A stretch of 64,000 bases of DNA, from IMG/VR virus record IMGVR_UViG_3300042511_000879, positions 124,001 through 188,000 of that record. One strand, given 5' to 3'. A program made the translations under genes and the position numbers. The notes under the pieces are model-generated. The model saw only the letters and a program-made list of their open reading frames with translations, was not told where the DNA came from and made no database searches. The stretch's first letter is position 1. Every line of letters begins with the position of its first letter. Shown piece after piece: positions 1,582 through 58,399 of the stretch.

Positions 1582-4373
1582 ATTTGTCCTCCATCTATTA
1601 TTGTCCAGTTATTTGGAGCTGATGTTAATATTGCTCTTTCTGGAGCTGCAGCTGCACTATATTTAGTTGTTCCAAAGCTAATTACTTTATTTGCAAGAAC
1701 TGGTCTAGATGACCAGCCTTCAAGTAAATTATCGTAGTCTGTAGTTGATAATCCTATTCCATCTGCGAAGGTTTCGTTTAATATAGTAGAAGAATTAAAT
1801 GAGGTTACCAATGAAACATTCCAAGAATTAAGATTTTGATTAAAACTAGCAGCGTTATAAAACATAGCAGTCATATCTGTAACTTTAGCAGTATTCCAAT
1901 TTCCAATGTTTTGGTTAAACTGGCTTACAGCGTTTCCTGTCTTATTAAAAAACATATATGACATATTAGTAGCCTCCAAAGTGTCCCATGCATTATATGT
2001 AGAAGCTCCAATAGTAACACTAAATGTTCTTAAATTTTGATTAAATAATGGTTGATTTTTAAACATATTTAAAAACGTTTTTACTTTTGATGTGTTAAAA
2101 TTTCTAATAGAATTAAATGAAGAATTATTAAATACTCCTTGTGCATCAGAATTTAATAAATTTGCATTAAACATACTCGACATATCTGTTACGTTTAGCG
2201 TGTCCCACGCAGTGTATGTAGAAGCTCCAACTGTTACTTGTTTTGTTCCTACGCTTTTATCATAAAGAATTTGTCCTCTAAACATGCTCTGCATTGTAGT
2301 AACTTTTGATGTGTTCCAATTATCTATATTCTGATTAAAAATTCCGGTATTACGATAAACACCAAAGACATTAGACATATTCGTTACATTTAATGTGTCC
2401 CATGCAGTATACGTAACGCCATTAATAGTAGTTACTGTTGTGTTTATATCGCGATTAAATAATGGTTGATTTTGAAACATTGCAGCAAATGTTGTTACTT
2501 TTGATGTATTCCAATTACCAATAGCTGAACTGCCTCCACTATTAAATACCCCGCTAAGTGTATTTGCTGTAGTATATGCATTAAGCATACCAGACATGTT
2601 TGTTACATTTAATGTGTCCCACGCAGTATACGTAACACCATTAATAGTAGATACCCTTGTTCCAATAGGTTGATTAAATGATTGTTGACAATTAAACAAA
2701 CTTGCCATTGTAGTAACCTTTGATGTGTTCCAGTGTTTAATTGAATCGCTTCCACCATTATTAAATGATCCCGCCCGTACTGAGCTATTACTGGTGAAAG
2801 CATTAGATAAACTCGTAACATTTTCAATATTCCATGCGGTATATGTATTACCGCCAACCGTTACTACTTTGGTTCCAACATCTTGATTAAAAAATGCCTG
2901 TCTTTGACAAAAAGCAACAAGTGTTGTAACTTTAGACGTATTCCAGTTTTTAATACTATTTGAGCCTCCATTATTAAATATCCCAAAAGAATCTGCGGTA
3001 TTTAAGAAAGAATTGAACATAAATGACATAGAAGTTACGTTTAACGTGTCCCATGCTGTGTAAGTAACACCATTTACGGTTACTACTTTGGTACCAATAT
3101 CATAATTAAACACTGGATTACCCGAAAACATAGAGTTCATTAATGTTACCTTAGACGTATTCCAATTCTTAATACTGTCTGAACCTCCATTATTAAACTT
3201 GCTAGGAGGTACAGCAACCCCTGTAGCAGCGGCACTTTGGAACATACTACTCATATCAGTTACATTTAAAGTATCCCAGGCAGTATAAGTAACGCCGTTC
3301 ACGGTTACAACTTTAGTTCCGATATCTTGATTAAACGCAGTATTTCTTGCAAACATTGCTGACATATTTGTAACTTTAGAAGTATTCCAGTTACTTATTG
3401 GCTGGTTAAATGACGTATAAGTTCCACCTGGCACCGTTCCATCTGCTCCAAACATAAACCTCATAGAAGTTGCGTTTGACGTGTCCCATTTATTAATATC
3501 GGGACTACCTCCGTTGTTAAACTTAGCAGCGTGTACAAACATTAATTCAAATGTAGTAACATTGGAAGTATTCCAATTACTGATATTGTCATCAAAATTA
3601 ATATTGCCATCAAAGACTGAAAACATGTTTGTAATACTTGATGTATTCCATTCATTAATCCGATTAACTCGTACTAAACGAGTACAAGAGTGAAGCAGTC
3701 GAAAAAAACTCGTCATTCCAGTTGTGTCAAGAACATCTCTTACATTATCCAGCATTAAATTACCACAACCCATAAATATGGCAGTGTTATCTCCTGGTCT
3801 TAAAGGACCCCACCATCCAATTGATAAAATCTTAAGTCTATCTCCAGTATTATTAAATGTCCATCCTGTTACAGTTCCTGCTATATAAACATTATATGTT
3901 CCTGTTGTTGCGTAAGTATGCGTTGTTTGTGCTTGGTCCCAGGTTGTTATTGTATCTGATGTTCCATCGCCCCAATAAACAGTACAATTGTAAGTACCGG
4001 TACTAACTAATGGTAATTTGAATTGTGCTGCAGTACTACTACCAGTCGATATGTTATCAGTTTTGATTACGAAATTAAAAGAATTTCTAATAGTAAAAAA
4101 GTTACTTGTAGATTTAACACTACCCTTGGAGTTGGTTGCTTTAACTACACATCTTAATATTCCATTACTAATGTCCGGAAGTGTGTAAGTGTTTGCAGTA
4201 GCTCCTGATATTGGGCTACCCTCTAAAAACCATTGGTATGTATATGTTGATGTTGGACCGTCAAATACACCATCAGTTACAGATAGCACTGAACCAATCG
4301 ATGTATTTCCACTTACTACCGGAGCGGCAATAAATTGTCCCTGTTTTTTTCTAGATGATATTATACGTCTCAT
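1578..4373 (-). CDS. DUF285/BspA-type leucine-rich-repeat surface or virion protein with N-terminal Ig/PKD-like domains
   Basis: Repeated WNTSKVT.M..MF...FN and WDTLNVT.MS.MF units; N-terminal YTYQW...GAT..TYTL and YWGDGT...HTY..GTY motifs. Confidence 0.8.
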   Translation of the reverse strand: MRRIISSRKKQGQFIAAPVVSGNTSIGSVLSVTDGVFDGPTSTYTYQWFLEGSPISGATANTYTLPDISNGILRCVVKATNSKGSVKSTSNFFTIRNSFNFVIKTDNISTGSSTAAQFKLPLVSTGTYNCTVYWGDGTSDTITTWDQAQTTHTYATTGTYNVYIAGTVTGWTFNNTGDRLKILSIGWWGPLRPGDNTAIFMGCGNLMLDNVRDVLDTTGMTSFFRLLHSCTRLVRVNRINEWNTSSITNMFSVFDGNINFDDNISNWNTSNVTTFELMFVHAAKFNNGGSPDINKWDTSNATSMRFMFGADGTVPGGTYTSFNQPISNWNTSKVTNMSAMFARNTAFNQDIGTKVVTVNGVTYTAWDTLNVTDMSSMFQSAAATGVAVPPSKFNNGGSDSIKNWNTSKVTLMNSMFSGNPVFNYDIGTKVVTVNGVTYTAWDTLNVTSMSFMFNSFLNTADSFGIFNNGGSNSIKNWNTSKVTTLVAFCQRQAFFNQDVGTKVVTVGGNTYTAWNIENVTSLSNAFTSNSSVRAGSFNNGGSDSIKHWNTSKVTTMASLFNCQQSFNQPIGTRVSTINGVTYTAWDTLNVTNMSGMLNAYTTANTLSGVFNSGGSSAIGNWNTSKVTTFAAMFQNQPLFNRDINTTVTTINGVTYTAWDTLNVTNMSNVFGVYRNTGIFNQNIDNWNTSKVTTMQSMFRGQILYDKSVGTKQVTVGASTYTAWDTLNVTDMSSMFNANLLNSDAQGVFNNSSFNSIRNFNTSKVKTFLNMFKNQPLFNQNLRTFSVTIGASTYNAWDTLEATNMSYMFFNKTGNAVSQFNQNIGNWNTAKVTDMTAMFYNAASFNQNLNSWNVSLVTSFNSSTILNETFADGIGLSTTDYDNLLEGWSSRPVLANKVISFGTTKYSAAAAPERAILTSAPNNWTIIDGGQI

Positions 4374-4618
4374 CCAAGTAATGGTGCTAAATAGTCTGCG
4401 ATTGCCGCTTCTGTTGCATATGGTACTGCAGCATCATCTTGAAAATCTGTAAAATTTATTATAGTCAGCGTGGAGATATTAGTAACTCCTGTGTGAATTA
4501 ATGTAACTGATGTTGCAGTAAACTCTAAAATTGAGTAAAGCGCTGCATTTCCATATGTAGTTGTTCCATCTGTTTCTATTCTTAGTTGATTATCAACCTT
4601 CCAAACTTTTGTTGCCAT
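4370..4618 (-). CDS. Hypothetical virion-region protein
   Basis: 82 aa ORF overlapping the next gene; GATATATAA motif upstream at 4658-4666. Confidence 0.6.
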   Translation of the reverse strand: MATKVWKVDNQLRIETDGTTTYGNAALYSILEFTATSVTLIHTGVTNISTLTIINFTDFQDDAAVPYATEAAIADYLAPLLG

Positions 4619-30486: not shown

Positions 30487-31704
30487 TTAGTTACTTAGTG
30501 GTGCTTTAATTTCTGCGTGTGATTGATAGTTCTCAACAGTAAAATCACCTCTATCATATGTGAATATTCCGCCACCTATTCTCATTTTATTGTTTGGGTT
30601 TATTTTTAACGTCGGTAATGGAAAAGGTTCACTAGTACTGTATGGAATGTTATAAGTTTCAAAATACTCACTCATACCCCCACCAAATGGCATTAATTCA
30701 TCAACTGCTTTATTGTATTGTTCCTCACCCATTTTGTCTTTTAGCATTTCTGCCCTTTCTGGGAATTTTAATTCTCTTCCTATTTGTTTCTTTGCTTGTT
30801 CAATATGATTTGAATAAAGGTGAACATCGCCAAGATTTCCAATTAACTGATCAGGAACCATATTGACCTCTTTTGCCAAGATTTCTAATAGGAGTCCATA
30901 ACTTGTAATGTTGAATGGTAAACCTAAGAATGTATCTACTGAACGTTGATTCCACATTAGGGAGATTGCTCTGGTTGGGATTCCAGTTAAATCATTACCT
31001 TCCATATTTACTGAATCATAACCATATCTTTTCCAATATAAATCTTCTCTTTCACCTTCACTCAACTCTCTTGTATAAACTTGAATTCCATAATGACAAG
31101 GTGGAAGAACCATTTGGTCTAATTCTCCAACATTCCAAGCATTGACCATTAATCGTCTTGAGTCTGGATTTGTTTTAAGATCGTTGATTAGATTTTGGAT
31201 TTGGTCTACCCATACGTTCCCAATAAAGATTTCACCTGTTTCTGAGTTCATGGTAGGTTTTACATCCCATTTTCTCCATTGCTTACCATAAATAGGCCCC
31301 AACTCACCCCACATCTTTCCAAACTCATTATCTGTTTTAATTTTGTTGATGAACTCTTCTTGCGTTAATGATTCTACCTGACCAGTCATTCCCATTGTAA
31401 TTGAATATCTCTTATAACAGTCTCCATCCCAAATATGGCAATTATTATCAACCAAATACTTAATATTTGTATCACCTCGTAAGAACCAAAGAAGTTCTGT
31501 TACGATTGTTTTGAATGGCATCTTTTTAGTTGTAAGTAGTGGAAACCCTTCGGACATTTTGTGTCTTATTTGGCGTCCAAAAACTGAGACCGTTCCTGTA
31601 CCTGTCCTGTCACCTTTAACTACTCCATTGTCTAATATGTCTTGGAGCAGGTTGGTGTATTGCTTGTCTAAAGTATTATTTTTTATCGCATTTATTTTTT
31701 CCAT
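30487..31704 (-). CDS. thyA: Thymidylate synthase
   Basis: DRTGTGT, FPLLTTKK, ELLWFLRG, GPIYGKQWR, PDSRR, LPPCH, QRSVD.FLGLPFN, GDVHLY.NH. Start set at the MEKIN ATG; contains lineage-specific insertions. Confidence 0.95.
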   Translation of the reverse strand: MEKINAIKNNTLDKQYTNLLQDILDNGVVKGDRTGTGTVSVFGRQIRHKMSEGFPLLTTKKMPFKTIVTELLWFLRGDTNIKYLVDNNCHIWDGDCYKRYSITMGMTGQVESLTQEEFINKIKTDNEFGKMWGELGPIYGKQWRKWDVKPTMNSETGEIFIGNVWVDQIQNLINDLKTNPDSRRLMVNAWNVGELDQMVLPPCHYGIQVYTRELSEGEREDLYWKRYGYDSVNMEGNDLTGIPTRAISLMWNQRSVDTFLGLPFNITSYGLLLEILAKEVNMVPDQLIGNLGDVHLYSNHIEQAKKQIGRELKFPERAEMLKDKMGEEQYNKAVDELMPFGGGMSEYFETYNIPYSTSEPFPLPTLKINPNNKMRIGGGIFTYDRGDFTVENYQSHAEIKAPLSN

Positions 31705-32236
31705 GGTCTCTACTAATAACGGTTTTTGTTGTAAATTTTCCACATATACTACATGTAGCACAGTTTTTTTCTTTATTTTTTGGTTTTTTTAGTGACTCTA
31801 TATGTGTATTACTTAAAGGTTTTCCTTTTTTAGTTTTTGAAGTTGATTCACTTCTTTTTTTAATTCTTTCAGGTGAATCTTTTTGTTTACTTCTAGCAAT
31901 ACTTAATTTTTTTCTGTGCTCGTCTGTAAATATAACACCTTTTTTAAAACCTCCAGTATTACCTCCATCTCCTTGCTCAGGTATTAAATTTGCAAATTCT
32001 TTACTATTAACAACATCCCATAATTTTGAATAATACAAACCCATTTGTATTAATTTTTCTTTATCTTCAGTTTCAAATAAAATTGTTGTTTTTATATCAT
32101 TAGATGATATGTTATGTGTTTTTAAATGTCTTTTCCATACGGTGCCACTTCCCTTATATTTATAAGGATCGGTATTTACACATTTTCCTAGATATTTTAA
32201 ACCTAATGGTGATTCTTTTAAATATAATATTATCAT
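31676..32236 (-). CDS. Free-standing GIY-YIG homing endonuclease
   Basis: ILYL...KYLG...Y.GSG..WK.H...E; NUMOD3-like HRKKLS; C-terminal CxxC. Confidence 0.85.
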   Translation of the reverse strand: MIILYLKESPLGLKYLGKCVNTDPYKYKGSGTVWKRHLKTHNISSNDIKTTILFETEDKEKLIQMGLYYSKLWDVVNSKEFANLIPEQGDGGNTGGFKKGVIFTDEHRKKLSIARSKQKDSPERIKKRSESTSKTKKGKPLSNTHIESLKKPKNKEKNCATCSICGKFTTKTVISRDHGKNKCDKK

Positions 32237-32285: not shown

Positions 32286-32684
32286 TTACAATATGTCTTT
32301 ATATGAATCTGTTTCTTTTAATATTGCGTCAAATGAGATTAAATTATCAACCCTAACTGTATTATCTTCAAGGACATGTCCTATCATCCTAGGTCTAAAT
32401 ACAATATCATCTAATAGAGTTTTTAACTCCTTTCCCCTGGGCGTATCGAGGACTTTGATTTCTGCAAAAAGAGTATCTCCTTCCACTTGAAGGTTTTCGA
32501 CTTGATGCGAAACTCTTTCTAAAGAGGTAAAAGAAGTACTTTCAGGATAACCAAGTTCTCCAAACATTTGAACTCCATTCGAAACTTTCTGTTTAAATTG
32601 AGCAACCATTTGTTCTAAACATTCATCAGTGTACATTCTACCATTAAGATTAACCGTGTTGGATTTTAATACTGATGTTTTCAT
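32286..32684 (-). CDS. T4 gp21-like prohead protease paralog, catalytic residues altered
   Basis: NLNGRMY, GELGYP (gp21 GELNHP), VSH, DTPRG, FRPRMIG (gp21 GVSSRGLG). Confidence 0.7.
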   Translation of the reverse strand: MKTSVLKSNTVNLNGRMYTDECLEQMVAQFKQKVSNGVQMFGELGYPESTSFTSLERVSHQVENLQVEGDTLFAEIKVLDTPRGKELKTLLDDIVFRPRMIGHVLEDNTVRVDNLISFDAILKETDSYKDIL

Positions 32685-33395
32685 TCATTTAACTATTTGA
32701 GTTGGAAGTTCTAATTTAAGAAATTTGTAAAGTGCCTCTTGAGATGGTCTGGCATTCTCATGTTGGTGTGGTATAATCCAAGCCTTTCCGTCATAATTAA
32801 CAATAGGCTTTGGCGTAATCATATACTCTAAAATTCCAACAGCATTTGTAGTAACTACGTCTTGATGCTTTTCATTAACAATTGTAAATCTACCATCCAG
32901 TAAATCATACACTCTGAAAAGGTCACCTTCAAAGTTTAAGAGACTTAAACGAGGACAGTGCGTCGTATGCACATAATTGGCCTTTGATTTATCAAGTTCT
33001 TTGATTTTAGTTGCAACTTTTAATATTGCTGAATTGATATGCTTTTGCTTTTCTTCATACATTTTTACAATATCTTCACGTCTTCCATCATCAAGAAGGG
33101 TTTTAAAAACTAATTTTTCAATCTTGCTAATTAACTTTGATTTGATGCTCATTGGAGCCGATTCTACTGGAAGGAATATCAATTCCTCAATTTCGTATTT
33201 GTCAAATTTAAGTTTGAATTTAACCGAACGTGAGTATTTTTCAATAACTTCTAAATCAACGTTCATATAAACTACAGGGCCAAGTTTAACCCACAACACC
33301 CTTCCACCTTCTTGGGGTTTTGGCAATTGAACCTTTACACTAGAACCAATAACATTGTCTAGCATAAATTCAATATATTTCTTATTTAGTTCCAT
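32685..33395 (-). CDS. Hypothetical protein
   Basis: 236 aa ORF. Confidence 0.6.
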   Translation of the reverse strand: MELNKKYIEFMLDNVIGSSVKVQLPKPQEGGRVLWVKLGPVVYMNVDLEVIEKYSRSVKFKLKFDKYEIEELIFLPVESAPMSIKSKLISKIEKLVFKTLLDDGRREDIVKMYEEKQKHINSAILKVATKIKELDKSKANYVHTTHCPRLSLLNFEGDLFRVYDLLDGRFTIVNEKHQDVVTTNAVGILEYMITPKPIVNYDGKAWIIPHQHENARPSQEALYKFLKLELPTQIVK

Positions 33396-34006: not shown

Positions 34007-34033
34007 AAAAAAGACCTTAATTACTTAAGGTCT
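34007..34033 (-). terminator. Intrinsic terminator
   Basis: AGACCTTAA-GTAA-TTAAGGTCT followed by TTTTT on the minus strand. Confidence 0.8.
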
Positions 34034-34059
34034 CCTAAAAATCTAATCCGGTCTGATTC

Positions 34060-37071: not shown

Positions 37072-37746
37072 CTATTGTTTCTTTTTACAATTGTCAAAAT
37101 GCCATCTAACCATTGCTGCTTTATTGCCAATTCTATTACAATGTATGCATTTTGCAGTTTTCACAATTGATTGACCTTTAATCCAACCTTTAGGTACTTC
37201 ATCAATATTTTTGAATCTCCTATTCTCTTTGGTATTTGGGTCATGATAAACATTTACTCCTGTATTTAATTCTCTTAAATATTCTTTAAACTCTTCAGAG
37301 GGTTTATAATCAAACTCTAATTGTTTTTTCTTGATTTTAGCTTTGGTTTCTTCAGACATTTTATTTCCCTTACAATAAGTATTTCCAAGATGTGCTTGCC
37401 TTAACTTTTCTCTAGTTTCTAATGAATATGGGCCATTCCAATCAAATCCGGAGCTTGTTTGCTTTGATTTATTGTAAAAAGATTCATTTATTCCTACATT
37501 AAATTTAGTATGTAGTTTAATCTCAAGTTGCATTGCTTCTTTTCGTGAATTAAACACAGAGACAATAACATATTTATAATCTTGAGGATTGTTCTTCTGG
37601 TCATTTCTGAATTCTTTGTCTGATGCGCTTGAAAAATACTTGACACCTAAATCTTTACATGGCTCTATATTTGAACTCCTTGTGCCGTAATAATGTTTGT
37701 TGAGTTTTGTGTTGGTAATCCTATACACATAGTGATATTTGTTCAT
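37072..37746 (-). CDS. Free-standing GIY-YIG homing endonuclease
   Basis: HYVYRITN...YYGTR, Y.SS, E..L; NUMOD3-like SLETREKLR/MSEETKAKI; C-terminal CIHC...RWHFDNC; GATATATA at 37775-37782. Confidence 0.85.
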   Translation of the reverse strand: MNKYHYVYRITNTKLNKHYYGTRSSNIEPCKDLGVKYFSSASDKEFRNDQKNNPQDYKYVIVSVFNSRKEAMQLEIKLHTKFNVGINESFYNKSKQTSSGFDWNGPYSLETREKLRQAHLGNTYCKGNKMSEETKAKIKKKQLEFDYKPSEEFKEYLRELNTGVNVYHDPNTKENRRFKNIDEVPKGWIKGQSIVKTAKCIHCNRIGNKAAMVRWHFDNCKKKQ

Positions 37747-37876: not shown

Positions 37877-38983
37877 TTATTTGTTATTTATTTCTTTTAT
37901 CTTTTCAGGTGTTAATGCCTTTAAGAATTCAACATATAATCGTATGGCATATTTAACATCGTTCTTGTGACACATTTCTACAGTGGTATGCATGTATCTT
38001 AGTGGAGTTGCCAAGATTGCAGTTGGTGTACCCTCTAAAAAGAAGGACATTGTATCATTACCCATTGAACCGACTGTTAATTGAACTGGAATCTTAGCCT
38101 CTTTTGCAACCTCTCTTAACATTTTGTTAATTTTTCGGTGATTTTGTGCAGTGTACTCTAAACATGGACCTTCTCCACCTTTATTATCTCCATCTTTTGC
38201 TTTATCTATTTTAGGAGTATCAGTTGCATGGCAAACATCATGCACTAGGGCCAAATCAGCTTTAAGTGTTTTTGCAATTAAAGTGGCTCCATGTAATCCT
38301 ACCTCCTCTTGAACTGAATTAACTACATATAAATCATAAGGTAAATATGCATCCTCTTCTACCAGTTTTCTTAGGGCTTCAGCAATAATATAACCACCAA
38401 TCTTGTTGTCTAATGAACGTCCAACATAATAGTTTCCAATCTCTTCTAATTGAGTGTCAAATGTGATTAAGTTTCCAATTTCAACTCCAGCTTTTACAAC
38501 AGCCTCCTTGTCTTTAAGACCCATATCAACCCATAGTTCCTCTGGACTGTAACCCATCGAAGTGTATTCTTTTCGGGTATGAATTGCTGGCCATCCAAAA
38601 AGTCCTCTTAATTTTCTACCATCATGAGTGTGTATCATTACCGTTTTAGAAGGTGCAATCATATTGTCGCTTCCACCATGTCTTTTTACCCGGATCATTC
38701 CATCACTGTCGATGTTTGTAATAATCCATGCAATTTCATCACAATGCGCTTCAATTACAACTTTAGGAGTCCATGGCTCTAAACCTTGTCCAGATTTTGT
38801 TTTTCCGCGGAAGACTGCATAAGCCGTACCATACGCATCAATTTTTACATTTCCATTTACTAATGGTCTAACATAATCCAACCAGATCTTTTGACCCTCT
38901 CCTTCTTGGGCTACTGGAGCGTACGCATTAAGGTAGTTATATAAGAACTCCTTATTTTTCTTCAATTGTTTTGTTTTCTTCAT
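37877..38983 (-). CDS. M42-family metallo-aminopeptidase
   Basis: AHCDEI, LDNKIGG, QEEVGL.GA, DV.HA.D, YMHTTVE metal-ligand motifs. Confidence 0.9.
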   Translation of the reverse strand: MKKTKQLKKNKEFLYNYLNAYAPVAQEGEGQKIWLDYVRPLVNGNVKIDAYGTAYAVFRGKTKSGQGLEPWTPKVVIEAHCDEIAWIITNIDSDGMIRVKRHGGSDNMIAPSKTVMIHTHDGRKLRGLFGWPAIHTRKEYTSMGYSPEELWVDMGLKDKEAVVKAGVEIGNLITFDTQLEEIGNYYVGRSLDNKIGGYIIAEALRKLVEEDAYLPYDLYVVNSVQEEVGLHGATLIAKTLKADLALVHDVCHATDTPKIDKAKDGDNKGGEGPCLEYTAQNHRKINKMLREVAKEAKIPVQLTVGSMGNDTMSFFLEGTPTAILATPLRYMHTTVEMCHKNDVKYAIRLYVEFLKALTPEKIKEINNK

Positions 38984-56870: not shown

Positions 56871-58399
56871 TATAGATTAGTTAAACGTTTTCTAATTTCT
56901 GTAAGAGTTGTTTGGTTTTCAAATTGACCATTCAAATAGATAGTTTTTAACAATCCAGACTTTTCATCTTCCCAAGTACATTGGTCTTCTAGTATGTAGA
57001 AATTATCTTCTACAGCTCCAGCAACTCTTAATAAACCTTTTGCAGATTTTTTAACTCCATCATCAGTGATTGGGTCTTTAAAGATTTCTCTTCCAACTCC
57101 ATCAACTTCTACATAGGTGGCTTTCATTGCAAAACCAAAAGTATCTCTAGTGTTATATTGGTATGTAAAACTTCCAACACCTAATACAATGTTTGTACTT
57201 GCAAAACCTTTTGCCTCTAATCTTGTGAAGATTTGTTCAGCACGGTCTAATGTAATACTGTCTCCGTAGATTGCTCCAATATGAGGGTCTAATACTTTAT
57301 AACCTTGGTCGTTAATAGTTCCACCGAATACATCCCAAAGTAATTCAATAACACCTTTTACTTCTGGTTTGTTTAAATATTCATCAGTAGGATTAACTTC
57401 TGCTACTCCACCTAAGTAAGCAACTACGTCATTATCGCTATGAACATTTGTTTTGATTATATTAGCACCGCAAATAATATCTACAGGGTCTCCTGAGTCA
57501 GGACGAATAACTAATTTACCATCTCTTGCAAGGATTTCCTCTTTTAAGGTAACGATATGTTCAGTACAAACTTTCCATAAGTCCCATGTGTCAGAAACTA
57601 CTGAAAGAATTCCTGTTGGATATGTCTCCAATAATCTACGGAAGGTTCCAATCTCATCATCTTTACTTCCAGCACACATTACTGAGTGCTCTGTTGCATT
57701 TACCGAACCAGATACAAATCCAGTTTCATTGTAATATTTACGGGCTCCAAAGATTGCAGGTAAACTATCTGAACCAGAGAAACTTGTTAAGTGTCCTAAT
57801 CCTGAAGAGATTGTAGCATCTATAGAGTCCATACCTCTCATTGAGAAATCATGGGCTTGCCAATCTACGAACCAACCTTTTTCGGCATCAGTTTTTAATT
57901 GCCATTCTGTAAATAATTTACGGTAAGCATGGGAAATAGTTGCACTTGTCATTGGTTTCCATAACAAGTTAGAAATAACTGTCTCCAAGTAATTGGTAAT
58001 CCAATAGAAATCTGGATGTGTGTTGTAAATTGTCAAGACAGGTACTCTCATTGGTACTGTAGCTCCTTCCTCAATCGATTTAACTGCGATTGGTAGGTAA
58101 CCCAAATCATGTAGGGCTTCAAAGTGGCTAACATCGTAGTCAGTATTTAAGTACATTGACAATTCGTTTTTCATTTCGCCACAAACTTTGTCTTTTGGTT
58201 TGCTAAAGAAATCTTTGTCAAAAGCCTCGTGGATTTGTTTCATTACCATTTGTTGGCCGAAACTTACTAGTTGGTTGCAACCTTTAGGAGCATATTTATT
58301 ACTACGAGGAGTAAAGTTCGAATAGACCAACGTAGTCCCTTTTGGATATTGTTGGTGATGTCCTGTTTTGTAACCGTCTGTTAAAAATAATGGGTTCAT
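56870..58399 (-). CDS. nadV: Nicotinamide phosphoribosyltransferase-like (NAMPT/NadV; possible Namat)
   Basis: TDGYK..H..QYP, LE, HDFS.RG, GSD, ATEHSV, SVVSDTWD, IRPDSGDP, IYGDSIT, GVGS, RDT.GFA.KAT, KDP.TD...K.SAKG. Confidence 0.9.
   Translation of the reverse strand: MNPLFLTDGYKTGHHQQYPKGTTLVYSNFTPRSNKYAPKGCNQLVSFGQQMVMKQIHEAFDKDFFSKPKDKVCGEMKNELSMYLNTDYDVSHFEALHDLGYLPIAVKSIEEGATVPMRVPVLTIYNTHPDFYWITNYLETVISNLLWKPMTSATISHAYRKLFTEWQLKTDAEKGWFVDWQAHDFSMRGMDSIDATISSGLGHLTSFSGSDSLPAIFGARKYYNETGFVSGSVNATEHSVMCAGSKDDEIGTFRRLLETYPTGILSVVSDTWDLWKVCTEHIVTLKEEILARDGKLVIRPDSGDPVDIICGANIIKTNVHSDNDVVAYLGGVAEVNPTDEYLNKPEVKGVIELLWDVFGGTINDQGYKVLDPHIGAIYGDSITLDRAEQIFTRLEAKGFASTNIVLGVGSFTYQYNTRDTFGFAMKATYVEVDGVGREIFKDPITDDGVKKSAKGLLRVAGAVEDNFYILEDQCTWEDEKSGLLKTIYLNGQFENQTTLTEIRKRLTNL

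What the first reader, a model, noticed from the sequence alone, without database searches (positions are those of the whole stretch)
32286..32684. Prohead-protease paralog with both catalytic residues replaced (pseudoprotease)
Seen: the 132-aa ORF aligns by eye with T4 gp21 (N.NGR.Y, GELGYP, VSH, DTPRG, R..G.V). The histidine of GEL.HP is Tyr, and GVSSRG (catalytic Ser) reads VFRPRM. Established: these His and Ser residues are the gp21 (MEROPS S77) catalytic residues. Inference: an intact but inactive copy, separate from the head gene cluster, could be a decoy, inhibitor or timing regulator of head maturation, or a reader of the E|A-tagged cargo described above.
Basis: partly seen in the sequence, partly recalled or inferred. 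Interest (0 to 1): 0.6.

Follow-up and report, generated by a model that had tools for sequence, protein, structure and literature searches.

The report
Dead, shortened copy of prohead protease
A large freshwater phage carries, far from its head genes, a small, well-conserved protein with the fold of the capsid-maturation protease but without the residues that cut; it probably binds rather than cleaves, and what it binds is still unknown.

Summary
Window 32286..32684 (-) encodes an intact 132-aa protein. It passes the Pfam threshold for Peptidase_S77 (T4 gp21). Its AlphaFold model superposes on T4 gp21 (5JBL) at Z 13.8, rmsd 2.1 A over 123 residues. T4 His85 is Tyr46 here, and Ser140 is Arg97 (Ser141 is Pro98).

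The phage's working protease keeps both residues. It is the N-terminal domain of a 640-aa protease-scaffold fusion between the portal and major capsid genes, 84 kb away.

The short form is not decay. About 20 intact orthologue clusters share Tyr (Trp in one member) and FRPR, with dN/dS 0.12-0.31, similar to neighbouring genes. All short forms make one clade, including copies in 595-735 kb uncultured phages.

It is an accessory gene. A close relative with the same gene order lacks exactly this gene. It always lies among early-type auxiliary genes near thyA, never among head genes.

Function is inferred only: a non-cleaving binder of the protease or its recognition segments. Similar short protease paralogues of unknown function were reported in phiKZ-like phages in 2017. 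Verdict: a new variant of a known kind, moderately interesting.

The parts
32286..32684 (-). CDS of the 132-aa short gp21-like protein (P0001), a stand-alone core of the prohead-protease fold
   Evidence: ORF list and translation. PF03420 32.9 bits against cut-off 27. AF2 model pLDDT 89.5. 5JBL Z 13.8, rmsd 2.1 A over 123 residues. dN/dS 0.12-0.31.
32547..32549 (-). Codon TAT = Tyr46, at the position of the catalytic His (T4 gp21 His85)
   Evidence: Alignment with T4 gp21 and active proteases. Tyr in 17 of 18 rows of the short-family alignment A2 and Trp in P0021. Outside A2, Met in L008 and His in L016. Codon read.
32391..32399 (-). Codons for Phe96-Arg97-Pro98 (FRP of the invariant FRPR motif), replacing V-S-S of VSSRG. 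Arg97 sits at the nucleophile position (T4 Ser140).
   Evidence: Alignments. Column statistics: S to R and S to P in 100% of the short family. Codons read.
32328..32330 (-). Codon GAC = Asp119, aligned with T4 gp21 Asp168. This is the likely third catalytic residue, and it is retained.
   Evidence: Alignment. Asp in 94% of the short family and 100% of the active proteases. The identity of the third catalytic residue rests on the statement in PMC5694885 that the gp21 triad is His/Ser/Asp, plus alignment.
32685..33395 (-). Upstream 236-aa gene of unknown function whose TGA stop abuts the ATG of the short gene. Probably co-transcribed, but not a conserved partner.
   Evidence: ORFs. Homologues precede the short gene only in the window's own clade, and other clades have an unrelated ~130-aa gene (hhalign probability 0.1%). 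It is present in G004, which lacks the short gene.

Best explanation
SHOWN. The gene encodes a stand-alone, shortened core of the prohead (capsid-maturation) serine-protease fold of the T4 gp21 / MEROPS S77 type. The general base His is replaced by Tyr and the nucleophile Ser by Arg. The N-terminal ~40 and C-terminal ~40 residues of gp21 are absent. It is kept intact under purifying selection. It belongs to an old clade of such short forms in large freshwater and other uncultured phages. It is an accessory gene, present or absent between close relatives, and it lies among early-type auxiliary genes near thyA, 84 kb from the head module that holds the active protease-scaffold fusion.

INFERRED. 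It cannot cleave. Yet it keeps many residues that are conserved around the active-site region of real proteases: N-x-N-G, Y18, F-G-E-L-G-x-P, S-H, D-T-P-x-G, Arg99, Gly102 and Asp119. The likeliest mode of action is therefore binding without cutting. It would bind either the short I/L-x-E-type segments that gp21-type proteases recognise, acting as a substrate trap, or the protease domain itself.

INFERRED CONSEQUENCE. It lacks the C-terminal part, which in related proteases is thought to carry the enzyme into the prohead. It would therefore act in the cytoplasm. There it could limit or redirect cleavage outside the prohead, for example premature or off-target cleavage of phage proteins, or of host proteins that respond to phage protease activity.

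CONFIDENCE. The stated confidence of 0.45 is for the whole statement including the inferred mechanism. The shown part alone I would put at about 0.9.
For: Homology and fold: PF03420 above threshold, PHROG 207 at E 1.2e-20, AF2 model pLDDT 89.5 and pTM 0.82, Foldseek best hit 5JBL at E 9e-6, and VIA-align Z 13.8 with rmsd 2.1 A over 123 residues, against Z 5-7 for herpesvirus proteases.

Loss of catalytic residues: alignments. H to Y, S to R, S to P and R13 to L affect columns that are 100% conserved in the active proteases; the R, P and L replacements are in 100% of the short family and Tyr in 94%.

Retained non-catalytic motifs.

Active enzyme elsewhere.

Selection: ten intact orthologues give NG86 dN/dS of 0.12-0.31 at dS 0.09-0.8. 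Neighbouring genes give 0.06-0.53.

One clade: 19 short forms group at 97/94 support.

Accessory status: in G004 the 236-aa gene abuts thyA with an 8-nt gap and no short gene. G005 also lacks it although thyA is present.

Context: never in head modules.

Precedents: the C-terminal region of the giant-phage protease is inferred to target it to the prohead, and it is missing from the paralogue gp117 (PMC5694885). T4 gp21 activity in the cytoplasm is sensed by CBASS through cleavage of an I/LxE-bearing loop (PMC12991175).
Against: No binding partner has been shown. The single co-folding job with the phage's own protease domain gave no verdict, which counts neither way. The retained motifs could be purely structural, such as turns and Gly/Pro positions, rather than ligand-binding. 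I could not inspect the model coordinates to place them on the cleft. Absence from a close relative whose protease domain is 96% identical shows that head maturation does not need it. Expression and its timing are unknown. The only RNA-library match is a 195-nt contig in the upstream gene, and it may be DNA carry-over. The short family evolves much faster than the protease domain: 48-89% identity among the orthologues, against 89-99% among the top 120 protease homologues. That fits a conflict or accessory role as well as, or better than, a housekeeping regulator.
Confidence: 0.45

Rival explanations
1. Counter-defence protein. The dead protease core is made in the cytoplasm to blunt host immunity that is triggered by prohead-protease activity. 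It would occupy the host 'tripwire' loops without cutting them, or hold free active protease until it is inside the prohead.
For: T4 gp21 activity is sufficient to activate CBASS by cleaving a CD-NTase loop that carries an I/LxE motif. About 24% of CBASS operons have such loops (PMC12991175). Prohead-protease mutations allow escape from type I CBASS (title and abstract of bioRxiv 10.1101/2023.05.21.541620). The gene is accessory, evolves fast and lies among auxiliary early-type genes, which is the usual profile of anti-defence genes.
Against: There is no direct evidence at all. The host is unknown, so its defence repertoire is unknown. No known anti-defence family matches. A protease mimic need not bind the substrates of the real enzyme.
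Confidence: 0.15
2. Exapted fold with a function unrelated to proteolysis or to the head. The protease core is reused as a small binding or structural module for some other phage or host target.
For: The new invariant residues are specific to the short family: FRPR, Tyr46, Leu13 and the C-terminal D-S-Y/F. Longer members carry a conserved acidic-aromatic tail, DPYGEENW. Many 124-150-aa uncharacterised proteins with this fold occur in unrelated jumbo and T4-like phages, and several phages hold two or three of them. There is no conserved gene partner.
Against: A large share of the residues conserved in real proteases is still kept. That is unexpected if the old site were irrelevant.
Confidence: 0.25
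3. A decaying duplicate or fragment of the protease gene with no function. Its truncation might be linked to the neighbouring homing endonuclease.
For: It is shorter than gp21 at both ends and lacks the catalytic residues. A homing-endonuclease gene sits immediately downstream.
Against: About 20 intact clusters of nearly the same length go down to 48% identity, or 40% for a 166-aa member. dN/dS is 0.12-0.31. The fold prediction is confident. Relatives have the same 132-aa gene without the endonuclease (L022, L025). An endonuclease 84% identical sits by thyA in L003, where the short gene is 3 kb away. So the endonuclease goes with thyA, not with this gene.
Confidence: 0.03
4. Still an active peptidase that uses a different catalytic set, for example the conserved Ser59-His60 pair or Asp119.
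For: Ser59, His60 and Asp119 are invariant or nearly so.
Against: Ser59-His60 are equally conserved in the active proteases, where they are not the catalytic dyad, and T4 gp21 itself lacks them. The nucleophile position holds Arg followed by Pro, invariantly.
Confidence: 0.03

Closest known systems
T4 gp21 prohead protease (MEROPS S77, Pfam PF03420, PDB 5JBL)
   Same: Same fold: Z 13.8, rmsd 2.1 A, model 1-124 on gp21 40-173. Sequence match above the Pfam threshold. Shared motifs N-x-N-G..Y, GELGxP, DTPxG, R..G and the Asp aligned with T4 D168.
   Different: His85 is Tyr and Ser140 is Arg. There is no N-terminal ~40 residues, which in gp21 include the self-cleaved segment that blocks the active site (PMC9958956). 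There is no C-terminal ~40 residues. It is not in the head gene cluster, and it is dispensable in a close relative.
Short paralogues of the prohead protease in phiKZ-like giant phages: SPN3US gp117, PhiPA3 gp143 (136 aa), 201phi2-1 gp206 (145 aa). Reported in Front Microbiol 2017, PMC5694885. Function unknown.
   Same: A second, short protease-like gene apart from the real protease. The C-terminal prohead-targeting part is missing. PhiPA3 gp143 aligns GELGYP with CEFGHP, FRPR with YRLG, and ISFDAI with ITFDVL. 201phi2-1 gp206 appears among structural matches to the model (B3FJ68). It is not annotated as a virion protein, although its neighbours are.
   Different: Those proteins derive from the S80 (phiKZ gp175) type (Pfam S80 E 5.3e-6). 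The profile comparison with the short family here is weak (E 0.019, probability 2.5%), so common descent of the short forms is not shown. gp117 is reported to keep the Ser and Asp, and gp143 keeps the His. Here both His and Ser are gone.
The phage's own protease-scaffold fusion (P0056, 640 aa, genome 139642-141564) and similar fusions in Tenacibaculum phages PTm1 and pT24
   Same: Homologous protease core, 29-30% identity. It is the weakly supported sister group of the short clade in the tree (87/81).
   Different: It keeps His and Ser, carries a ~450-aa scaffold-like extension, sits between the portal and the major capsid protein, and is very strongly conserved (89-99% identity over the top 120 homologues).
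Herpesvirus assemblin proteases (for example HCMV, VZV, PRV pUL26N)
   Same: Distantly the same fold class (Z 5-7).
   Different: No sequence similarity. They are much larger, catalytically active and dimeric.
T4 Inh (minor head protein, inhibitor of the gp21 protease)
   Same: A phage-encoded modulator of the prohead protease, as annotated in the T4 record. It is a functional analogue only if the inhibitor reading is right.
   Different: It was not compared in detail here. It is listed only as the known precedent that phages encode a protease inhibitor. Homology was not tested.

Membership tests
Peptidase S77 / PF03420 (T4 gp21-type prohead protease) | Sequence match to the family profile above the curated threshold | tested here: met
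   32.9 bits against cut-off 27, E 5.9e-8, residues 5-90 on profile 50-136 of 198.
Peptidase S77 / PF03420 (T4 gp21-type prohead protease) | gp21 / herpesvirus-protease fold | tested here: met
   AF2 pLDDT 89.5. 5JBL at Foldseek E 9e-6. VIA-align Z 13.8, rmsd 2.1 A, 123 residues aligned.
Peptidase S77 / PF03420 (T4 gp21-type prohead protease) | Catalytic histidine (T4 His85, GELxHP) | tested here: not met
   Tyr46. Tyr in 94% of the short family; His in 100% of the active set.
Peptidase S77 / PF03420 (T4 gp21-type prohead protease) | Nucleophile serine (T4 Ser140, VSSRG) | tested here: not met
   Arg97, followed by Pro98. Both are invariant in the short family.
Peptidase S77 / PF03420 (T4 gp21-type prohead protease) | Third catalytic residue (Asp) | tested here: inconclusive
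   Asp119 aligns with T4 Asp168 and is conserved. I could not read the structure paper to confirm which Asp completes the triad. PMC5694885 says only His/Ser/Asp.
Peptidase S77 / PF03420 (T4 gp21-type prohead protease) | Full-length architecture with the N-terminal segment and the C-terminal region | tested here: not met
   The protein covers only gp21 40-173. The VADPSAP block and the following helices are absent.
Peptidase S77 / PF03420 (T4 gp21-type prohead protease) | Gene in the head module beside portal, scaffold and major capsid genes | tested here: not met
   It lies 84 kb from the head module. In all relatives it lies near thyA, DHFR, cupin and cREC_REC genes.
Peptidase S77 / PF03420 (T4 gp21-type prohead protease) | Proteolytic activity after Glu in I/L-x-E motifs | not testable with these tools
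   Needs a biochemical assay.
Short prohead-protease paralogues of giant phages (SPN3US gp117 group) | Second, shorter protease-like gene besides the bona fide protease, lacking the C-terminal targeting region | tested here: met
   Description of gp117 in PMC5694885.
Short prohead-protease paralogues of giant phages (SPN3US gp117 group) | Demonstrable sequence relationship to gp143, gp206 or gp117 | tested here: inconclusive
   hhalign A2 against A7: E 0.019, probability 2.5%. A3 against A7: E 0.0034, probability 9%. gp143 matches S80, not S77. There is structural similarity to 201phi2-1 proteins.
Pseudoenzyme (pseudoprotease) in the general sense | Enzyme fold kept, catalytic residues lost, gene maintained by purifying selection | tested here: met
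T4 gp68 prohead core protein (141 aa, encoded next to gene 21) | Sequence similarity | tested here: not met
   BLASTP gives no alignment. hhalign probability 0.2%. No Pfam S77 hit for gp68.

The most novel reading that the evidence does not exclude
The short dead protease is an anti-immunity factor aimed at host systems that detect phage prohead-protease activity, such as CBASS CD-NTases with protease-cleavable activation loops. As a non-cutting copy of the protease core it would cover the host tripwire loop, or sequester stray active protease in the cytoplasm. The infection could then reach head maturation without setting off the alarm. The same logic could explain the recurrent short protease paralogues in phiKZ-like and other jumbo phages.
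Probability: 0.13. Interest if true: 0.85.

Novelty: new variant of a known kind. Interest (0 to 1): 0.55.

Why it matters
Prohead proteases are among the most conserved parts of tailed-phage and herpesvirus assembly. A widespread, selected, catalytically dead and shortened copy means that large phages use this fold for something other than cutting. Similar short paralogues were noted in phiKZ-like phages in 2017 and have stayed unexplained. Here a second, S77-derived family shows the same pattern with clearer inactivation, clear purifying selection and clear accessory status.

Prohead-protease activity has recently been reported as a trigger of CBASS immunity. That makes a non-cutting protease mimic a concrete, cheaply testable candidate for a regulator of off-target proteolysis, or for a new kind of anti-defence protein. 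If instead it only fine-tunes head maturation, it is a modest addition to phage assembly biology.

Tried and rejected
(1) Co-folding of the 132-aa protein with residues 1-190 of the phage's own protease (complex prediction): no verdict (score 0.08, mark 0.34). It is evidence neither for nor against binding.

(2) T4 gp68, the 141-aa core protein encoded next to gene 21, as a possible known counterpart: no similarity. Dropped.

(3) A conserved upstream partner gene: the upstream genes fall into two unrelated families (hhalign probability 0.1%). Dropped.

(4) Timing from T4-type late promoters: TATAAATA occurs 44 times on both strands of the 34% GC genome, not above my rough chance estimate of about 66, and is not placed before head genes. 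Sigma-70-like sites are no more frequent than in shuffles. No timing inference is possible.

(5) Expression from public RNA runs: only one exact 195-nt contig, at 32690-32877 in the upstream gene, in a sediment metatranscriptome. The other RNA-library matches are diverged thyA pieces from other organisms. Transcription is not demonstrated.

(6) Homing-endonuclease involvement in the truncation: rejected. Relatives have the same gene without the endonuclease, and the endonuclease travels with thyA.

(7) The metagenome contigs and viral contigs pattern scans for more orthologue DNA gave few new loci. Orthologue DNA was taken by exact look-up instead.

(8) The structure paper on gp21 (PMC5093050) and Liu & Mushegian 2004 are not held. 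The numbering His85/Ser140 rests on my knowledge of MEROPS S77 and on the alignment to the T4 sequence.

(9) The big representative search was not run. The word search and family scans had settled the identity.

Full report
WHAT IS THERE. Window 32286..32684 on the minus strand is an intact 132-aa ORF (P0001). Its ATG directly follows the TGA stop of a 236-aa upstream gene. It matches Pfam Peptidase_S77, the T4 gp21 prohead protease family, at E 5.9e-8 and 32.9 bits against a curated cut-off of 27. The match covers residues 5-90 on profile positions 50-136 of 198. It also matches PHROG 207 'head maturation protease' at E 1.2e-20.

FOLD. An AlphaFold2 model built on a 44-sequence alignment is confident (mean pLDDT 89.5, pTM 0.82). 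Foldseek against the PDB puts T4 gp21 (5JBL) first at E 9e-6, and the next unrelated hits are at E > 0.03. VIA-align gives Z 13.8, rmsd 2.1 A over 123 residues, with model residues 1-124 on gp21 residues 40-173. Herpesvirus proteases follow at Z 5-7. So the protein is the core of the gp21 fold, and it lacks about 40 residues at each end of the 212-aa T4 enzyme.

CATALYTIC RESIDUES. I aligned P0001 with the T4 gp21 sequence from NC_000866, with active gp21-like proteases from metagenomes, and with the phage's own protease. T4 His85 (GELNHP) corresponds to Tyr46 (GELGYP). T4 Ser140-Ser141-Arg142 (VSSRG) corresponds to Arg97-Pro98-Arg99 (FRPR). T4 Asp168 corresponds to Asp119, which is kept. In a column-by-column comparison, four columns that are 100% conserved in 26 active proteases carry a different residue in the short family: Arg to Leu in N-R-N-G, His to Tyr, Ser to Arg and Ser to Pro. 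Three of the replacements are in 100% of the short family and Tyr is in 94%. Many other conserved positions are kept: Asn12, Asn14, Gly15, Tyr18, Phe41-Gly-Glu-Leu-Gly45, Pro47, Ser59-His60, Thr81, Gly84, Lys88, Asp92, Arg99, Gly102 and Asp119. The numbering of the catalytic His and Ser is from my knowledge of MEROPS S77. The papers that would confirm it are not held. PMC5694885 confirms that the gp21 triad is His/Ser/Asp.

THE REAL PROTEASE. The window is bases 24942-88941 of a 234,467-bp virus record. That record has 34% GC, and 285 of the 297 ORFs I called lie on one strand. The only other S77 match is at 141160-141504, inside a 640-aa ORF (P0056). Its N-terminal ~190 residues are a protease domain with GELDHP and ISSRAAG intact. 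The remainder is a long acidic, repeat-containing, scaffold-like region. It lies between the portal gene (PHROG 213, E 1.7e-69) and the major capsid gene (PHROG 138, E 5.7e-41). The short gene sits at genome position 57227-57625, 84 kb away.

NOT A DECAYING COPY. The word search found about 20 clusters of 132-139-aa proteins, going down to 48% identity, or 40% for a 166-aa member. After them come ordinary ~215-aa gp21 homologues at 32-39% identity. In the 18-row short-family alignment, 17 rows have Tyr at the His position and P0021 has Trp; all 18 have F-R-P at the Ser site, and the following Arg99 is Ser in P0021. I took the DNA of ten intact orthologues from public contigs and computed Nei-Gojobori dN/dS. 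Pairs that are not saturated give 0.12-0.31: window against L022 gives 0.14 at dS 0.71, L025 against L022 gives 0.12, L027 against L005 gives 0.14, and L026 against L003 gives 0.19. Neighbouring genes compared between the same contigs give 0.06-0.53.

AN OLD, SEPARATE CLADE. In a maximum-likelihood tree of 40 protease cores, all 19 short forms make one group (support 97/94). This group includes the copies in uncultured 735-kb and 595-kb phages (LR756501 and LR756511) and two IMG/VR contigs. It is joined only weakly (87/81, long branches) to the lineage of this phage's own protease. Within the clade the His position varies. It is Tyr in most members, Trp in P0021 and Met in the 595-kb phage. 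It is His in one contig (L016) that nests beside Tyr-bearing sequences. The nucleophile position is Arg in every member except the outlying L017, where it is Ala (VASRA). So this is not a recent duplicate of the resident protease, to which it is 29-30% identical.

ACCESSORY GENE IN AN AUXILIARY REGION. In every contig examined, the short gene lies among small genes of unknown function plus thyA, DHFR, a cupin, cREC_REC, HAD_SAK_2 and sometimes a ClpP-like gene. It is never beside head genes. In the window, its neighbours are two cell-wall hydrolases, thyA, two homing-endonuclease-like genes, an M42 aminopeptidase and a PD-(D/E)XK nuclease. The gene immediately upstream belongs to two unrelated families in different clades, so there is no conserved partner. 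The protease-scaffold fusion is very common and very conserved: 5,328 homologues, with the top 120 at 89-99% identity in the protease domain. The short gene is found in far fewer clusters.

The decisive case is the IMG/VR record G004 (199.7 kb, protease domain 96% identical). It has the same gene order as the window over at least 20 kb, but the 236-aa gene ends 8 nt before thyA, with no short gene between them. G005 also has thyA and no short gene. Eight other long relatives hold no short gene either, but they lack the relevant part of the genome and are uninformative.

The homing endonuclease between the short gene and thyA in the window is absent in L022 and L025, where the short gene's stop abuts thyA. 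An endonuclease 84% identical sits by thyA in L003, where the short gene is 3 kb away. The endonuclease therefore goes with thyA.

HABITAT AND LINEAGE. Near-identical DNA occurs in lake-water and freshwater metagenomes from 18 studies. The major capsid protein is closest to an uncultured 462-kb phage (52% identity) and then to Lak phages of Prevotella (38%). Tenacibaculum phages are among the capsid matches too, and they have the same protease-scaffold fusion. A Bacteroidota host is a reasonable guess, but it is not shown.

COMPARISON WITH WHAT IS KNOWN. A 2017 study of Salmonella phage SPN3US reported a diverged second homologue of the prohead protease, which the authors called unprecedented in the literature. 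It is SPN3US gp117, with counterparts in PhiPA3 (gp143, 136 aa), 201phi2-1 (gp206, 145 aa) and Erwinia phages. These are shorter than the protease and lack the C-terminal part that the authors infer targets the enzyme to the prohead. Their function is unknown (PMC5694885).

I fetched gp143 and gp206. gp143 matches Pfam Peptidase_S80 (E 5.3e-6), not S77. The profile comparison with the short family here is weak (E 0.019, probability 2.5%). Even so, the alignment pairs GELGYP with CEFGHP, FRPR with YRLG and ISFDAI with ITFDVL.

A structure search of viral models finds many uncharacterised 124-150-aa proteins with this fold in jumbo and T4-like phages. Examples are 201phi2-1 (two), Phabio (three), Yersinia fHe-Yen9-04, Klebsiella Eowyn, and Aeromonas 65.2 and AS-szw. 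The ESM Atlas lists 18 clusters without a common Pfam family among the 30 feature hits; the three shown are 130-137 aa with 55-140 members each.

Short stand-alone protease cores are therefore a recurrent feature of large phages. The family here is an S77-derived version with unambiguous loss of both His and Ser. T4 gp68 is not related.

HOW IT PROBABLY WORKS. This part is inference. Arg and Pro occupy the nucleophile site and Tyr replaces the general base, so cleavage is very unlikely. Many protease-conserved residues are retained, the new residues are invariant, and selection is purifying. Together these point to a binding function at or near the old active site. The candidates are the I/L-x-E-type segments that gp21-type enzymes recognise, or the protease domain itself.

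The protein lacks the C-terminal region, it is encoded far from the head genes, and a close relative does without it. It is therefore unlikely to be an integral part of the maturation machinery. It more likely acts in the cytoplasm as a modulator.

A 2026 preprint shows that T4 gp21 activity is sufficient to switch on CBASS by cutting an exposed CD-NTase loop (PMC12991175). That gives one concrete setting in which a non-cutting protease mimic would pay. It is my most novel reading, at roughly 13%.

The one co-folding job gave no verdict. Public RNA data do not show whether or when the gene is expressed.

VERDICT. The 'pseudoprotease' label is supported by fold, residues and selection. It is a new variant of a kind already noted, and unexplained, in phiKZ-like phages. 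It is moderately interesting, and simple experiments could decide between the readings.

Noticed in passing
window 31676..32236 (-): Homing-endonuclease-like gene (PHROG 314, E 1.3e-8) wedged between the short gene and thyA, overlapping the 5' end of the thyA ORF. It is absent in relatives L022 and L025. An 84% identical copy sits just upstream of thyA in the otherwise different contig L003. It looks like a thyA-associated mobile endonuclease.
   Followed up: partly
window 30487..31761 (-); L005 1634-3481: The thymidylate synthase is unusually long (405-436 aa in this phage group). In L005 it is called as two pieces (110 and 338 aa) with a 54-aa ORF between them. That suggests an insertion, an intron or a split gene.
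   Followed up: no
genome G000:C1:139642-141564 (outside the window; L029 10643-12565, -): The active prohead protease is fused to a ~450-aa acidic scaffold-like region. That region contains a near-perfect internal duplication of the segment AGIPAE...DVVDADGNVITGKPEDV. Some sources mislabel homologues as 'methyl-accepting chemotaxis protein'. Tenacibaculum phages PTm1 and pT24 have the same fusion.
   Followed up: partly
whole genome G000 (234,467 bp): By simple ORF calling, 285 of 297 ORFs lie on the minus strand. GC is 34%. The T4 late-promoter word TATAAATA is not enriched.
   Followed up: partly
window 37877..38983 (-) and 37072..37746 (-): A phage-encoded M42 glutamyl aminopeptidase (PF05343, E 6.6e-69) lies next to a second endonuclease-like gene with a NUMOD3 motif. 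An aminopeptidase with a preference for acidic N-termini is curious in a phage whose protease type cuts after Glu.
   Followed up: no
L007 2956-3492, L016 3983-4489, P0021: Longer members of the short family (166-178 aa), including the copy in a 735-kb phage, share a conserved C-terminal tail, (E/L)DPYGEENW. The 132-aa forms lack it. It may be a docking motif.
   Followed up: no
L016 (IMGVR_UViG_3300028283_000011) 3983-4489: One member keeps His at the catalytic-His position (GELGHP) while still having FRPR at the Ser site. It nests beside Tyr-bearing sequences in the tree. Tyr and His differ by a single base change, so this may be a reversal.
   Followed up: partly
L023 1974-2537; L024 600-1163: A ClpP-like protease gene (PF00574) lies about 1-2 kb upstream of the short gp21-like gene in two related contigs.
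   Followed up: no
window 34009..34036 (-): The best terminator-like hairpin in the region (12-bp stem followed by a T run) lies between the 94-aa and 102-aa genes. It could mark the start of the transcription unit that runs 102 aa, 71 aa, 236 aa, short gene.
   Followed up: no
window 32690..32877: A 195-nt contig with no mismatches lies in the upstream 236-aa gene, in a sediment metatranscriptome library (run X20). It may be transcript or carried-over DNA. Nothing from that run covers the short gene itself.
   Followed up: partly
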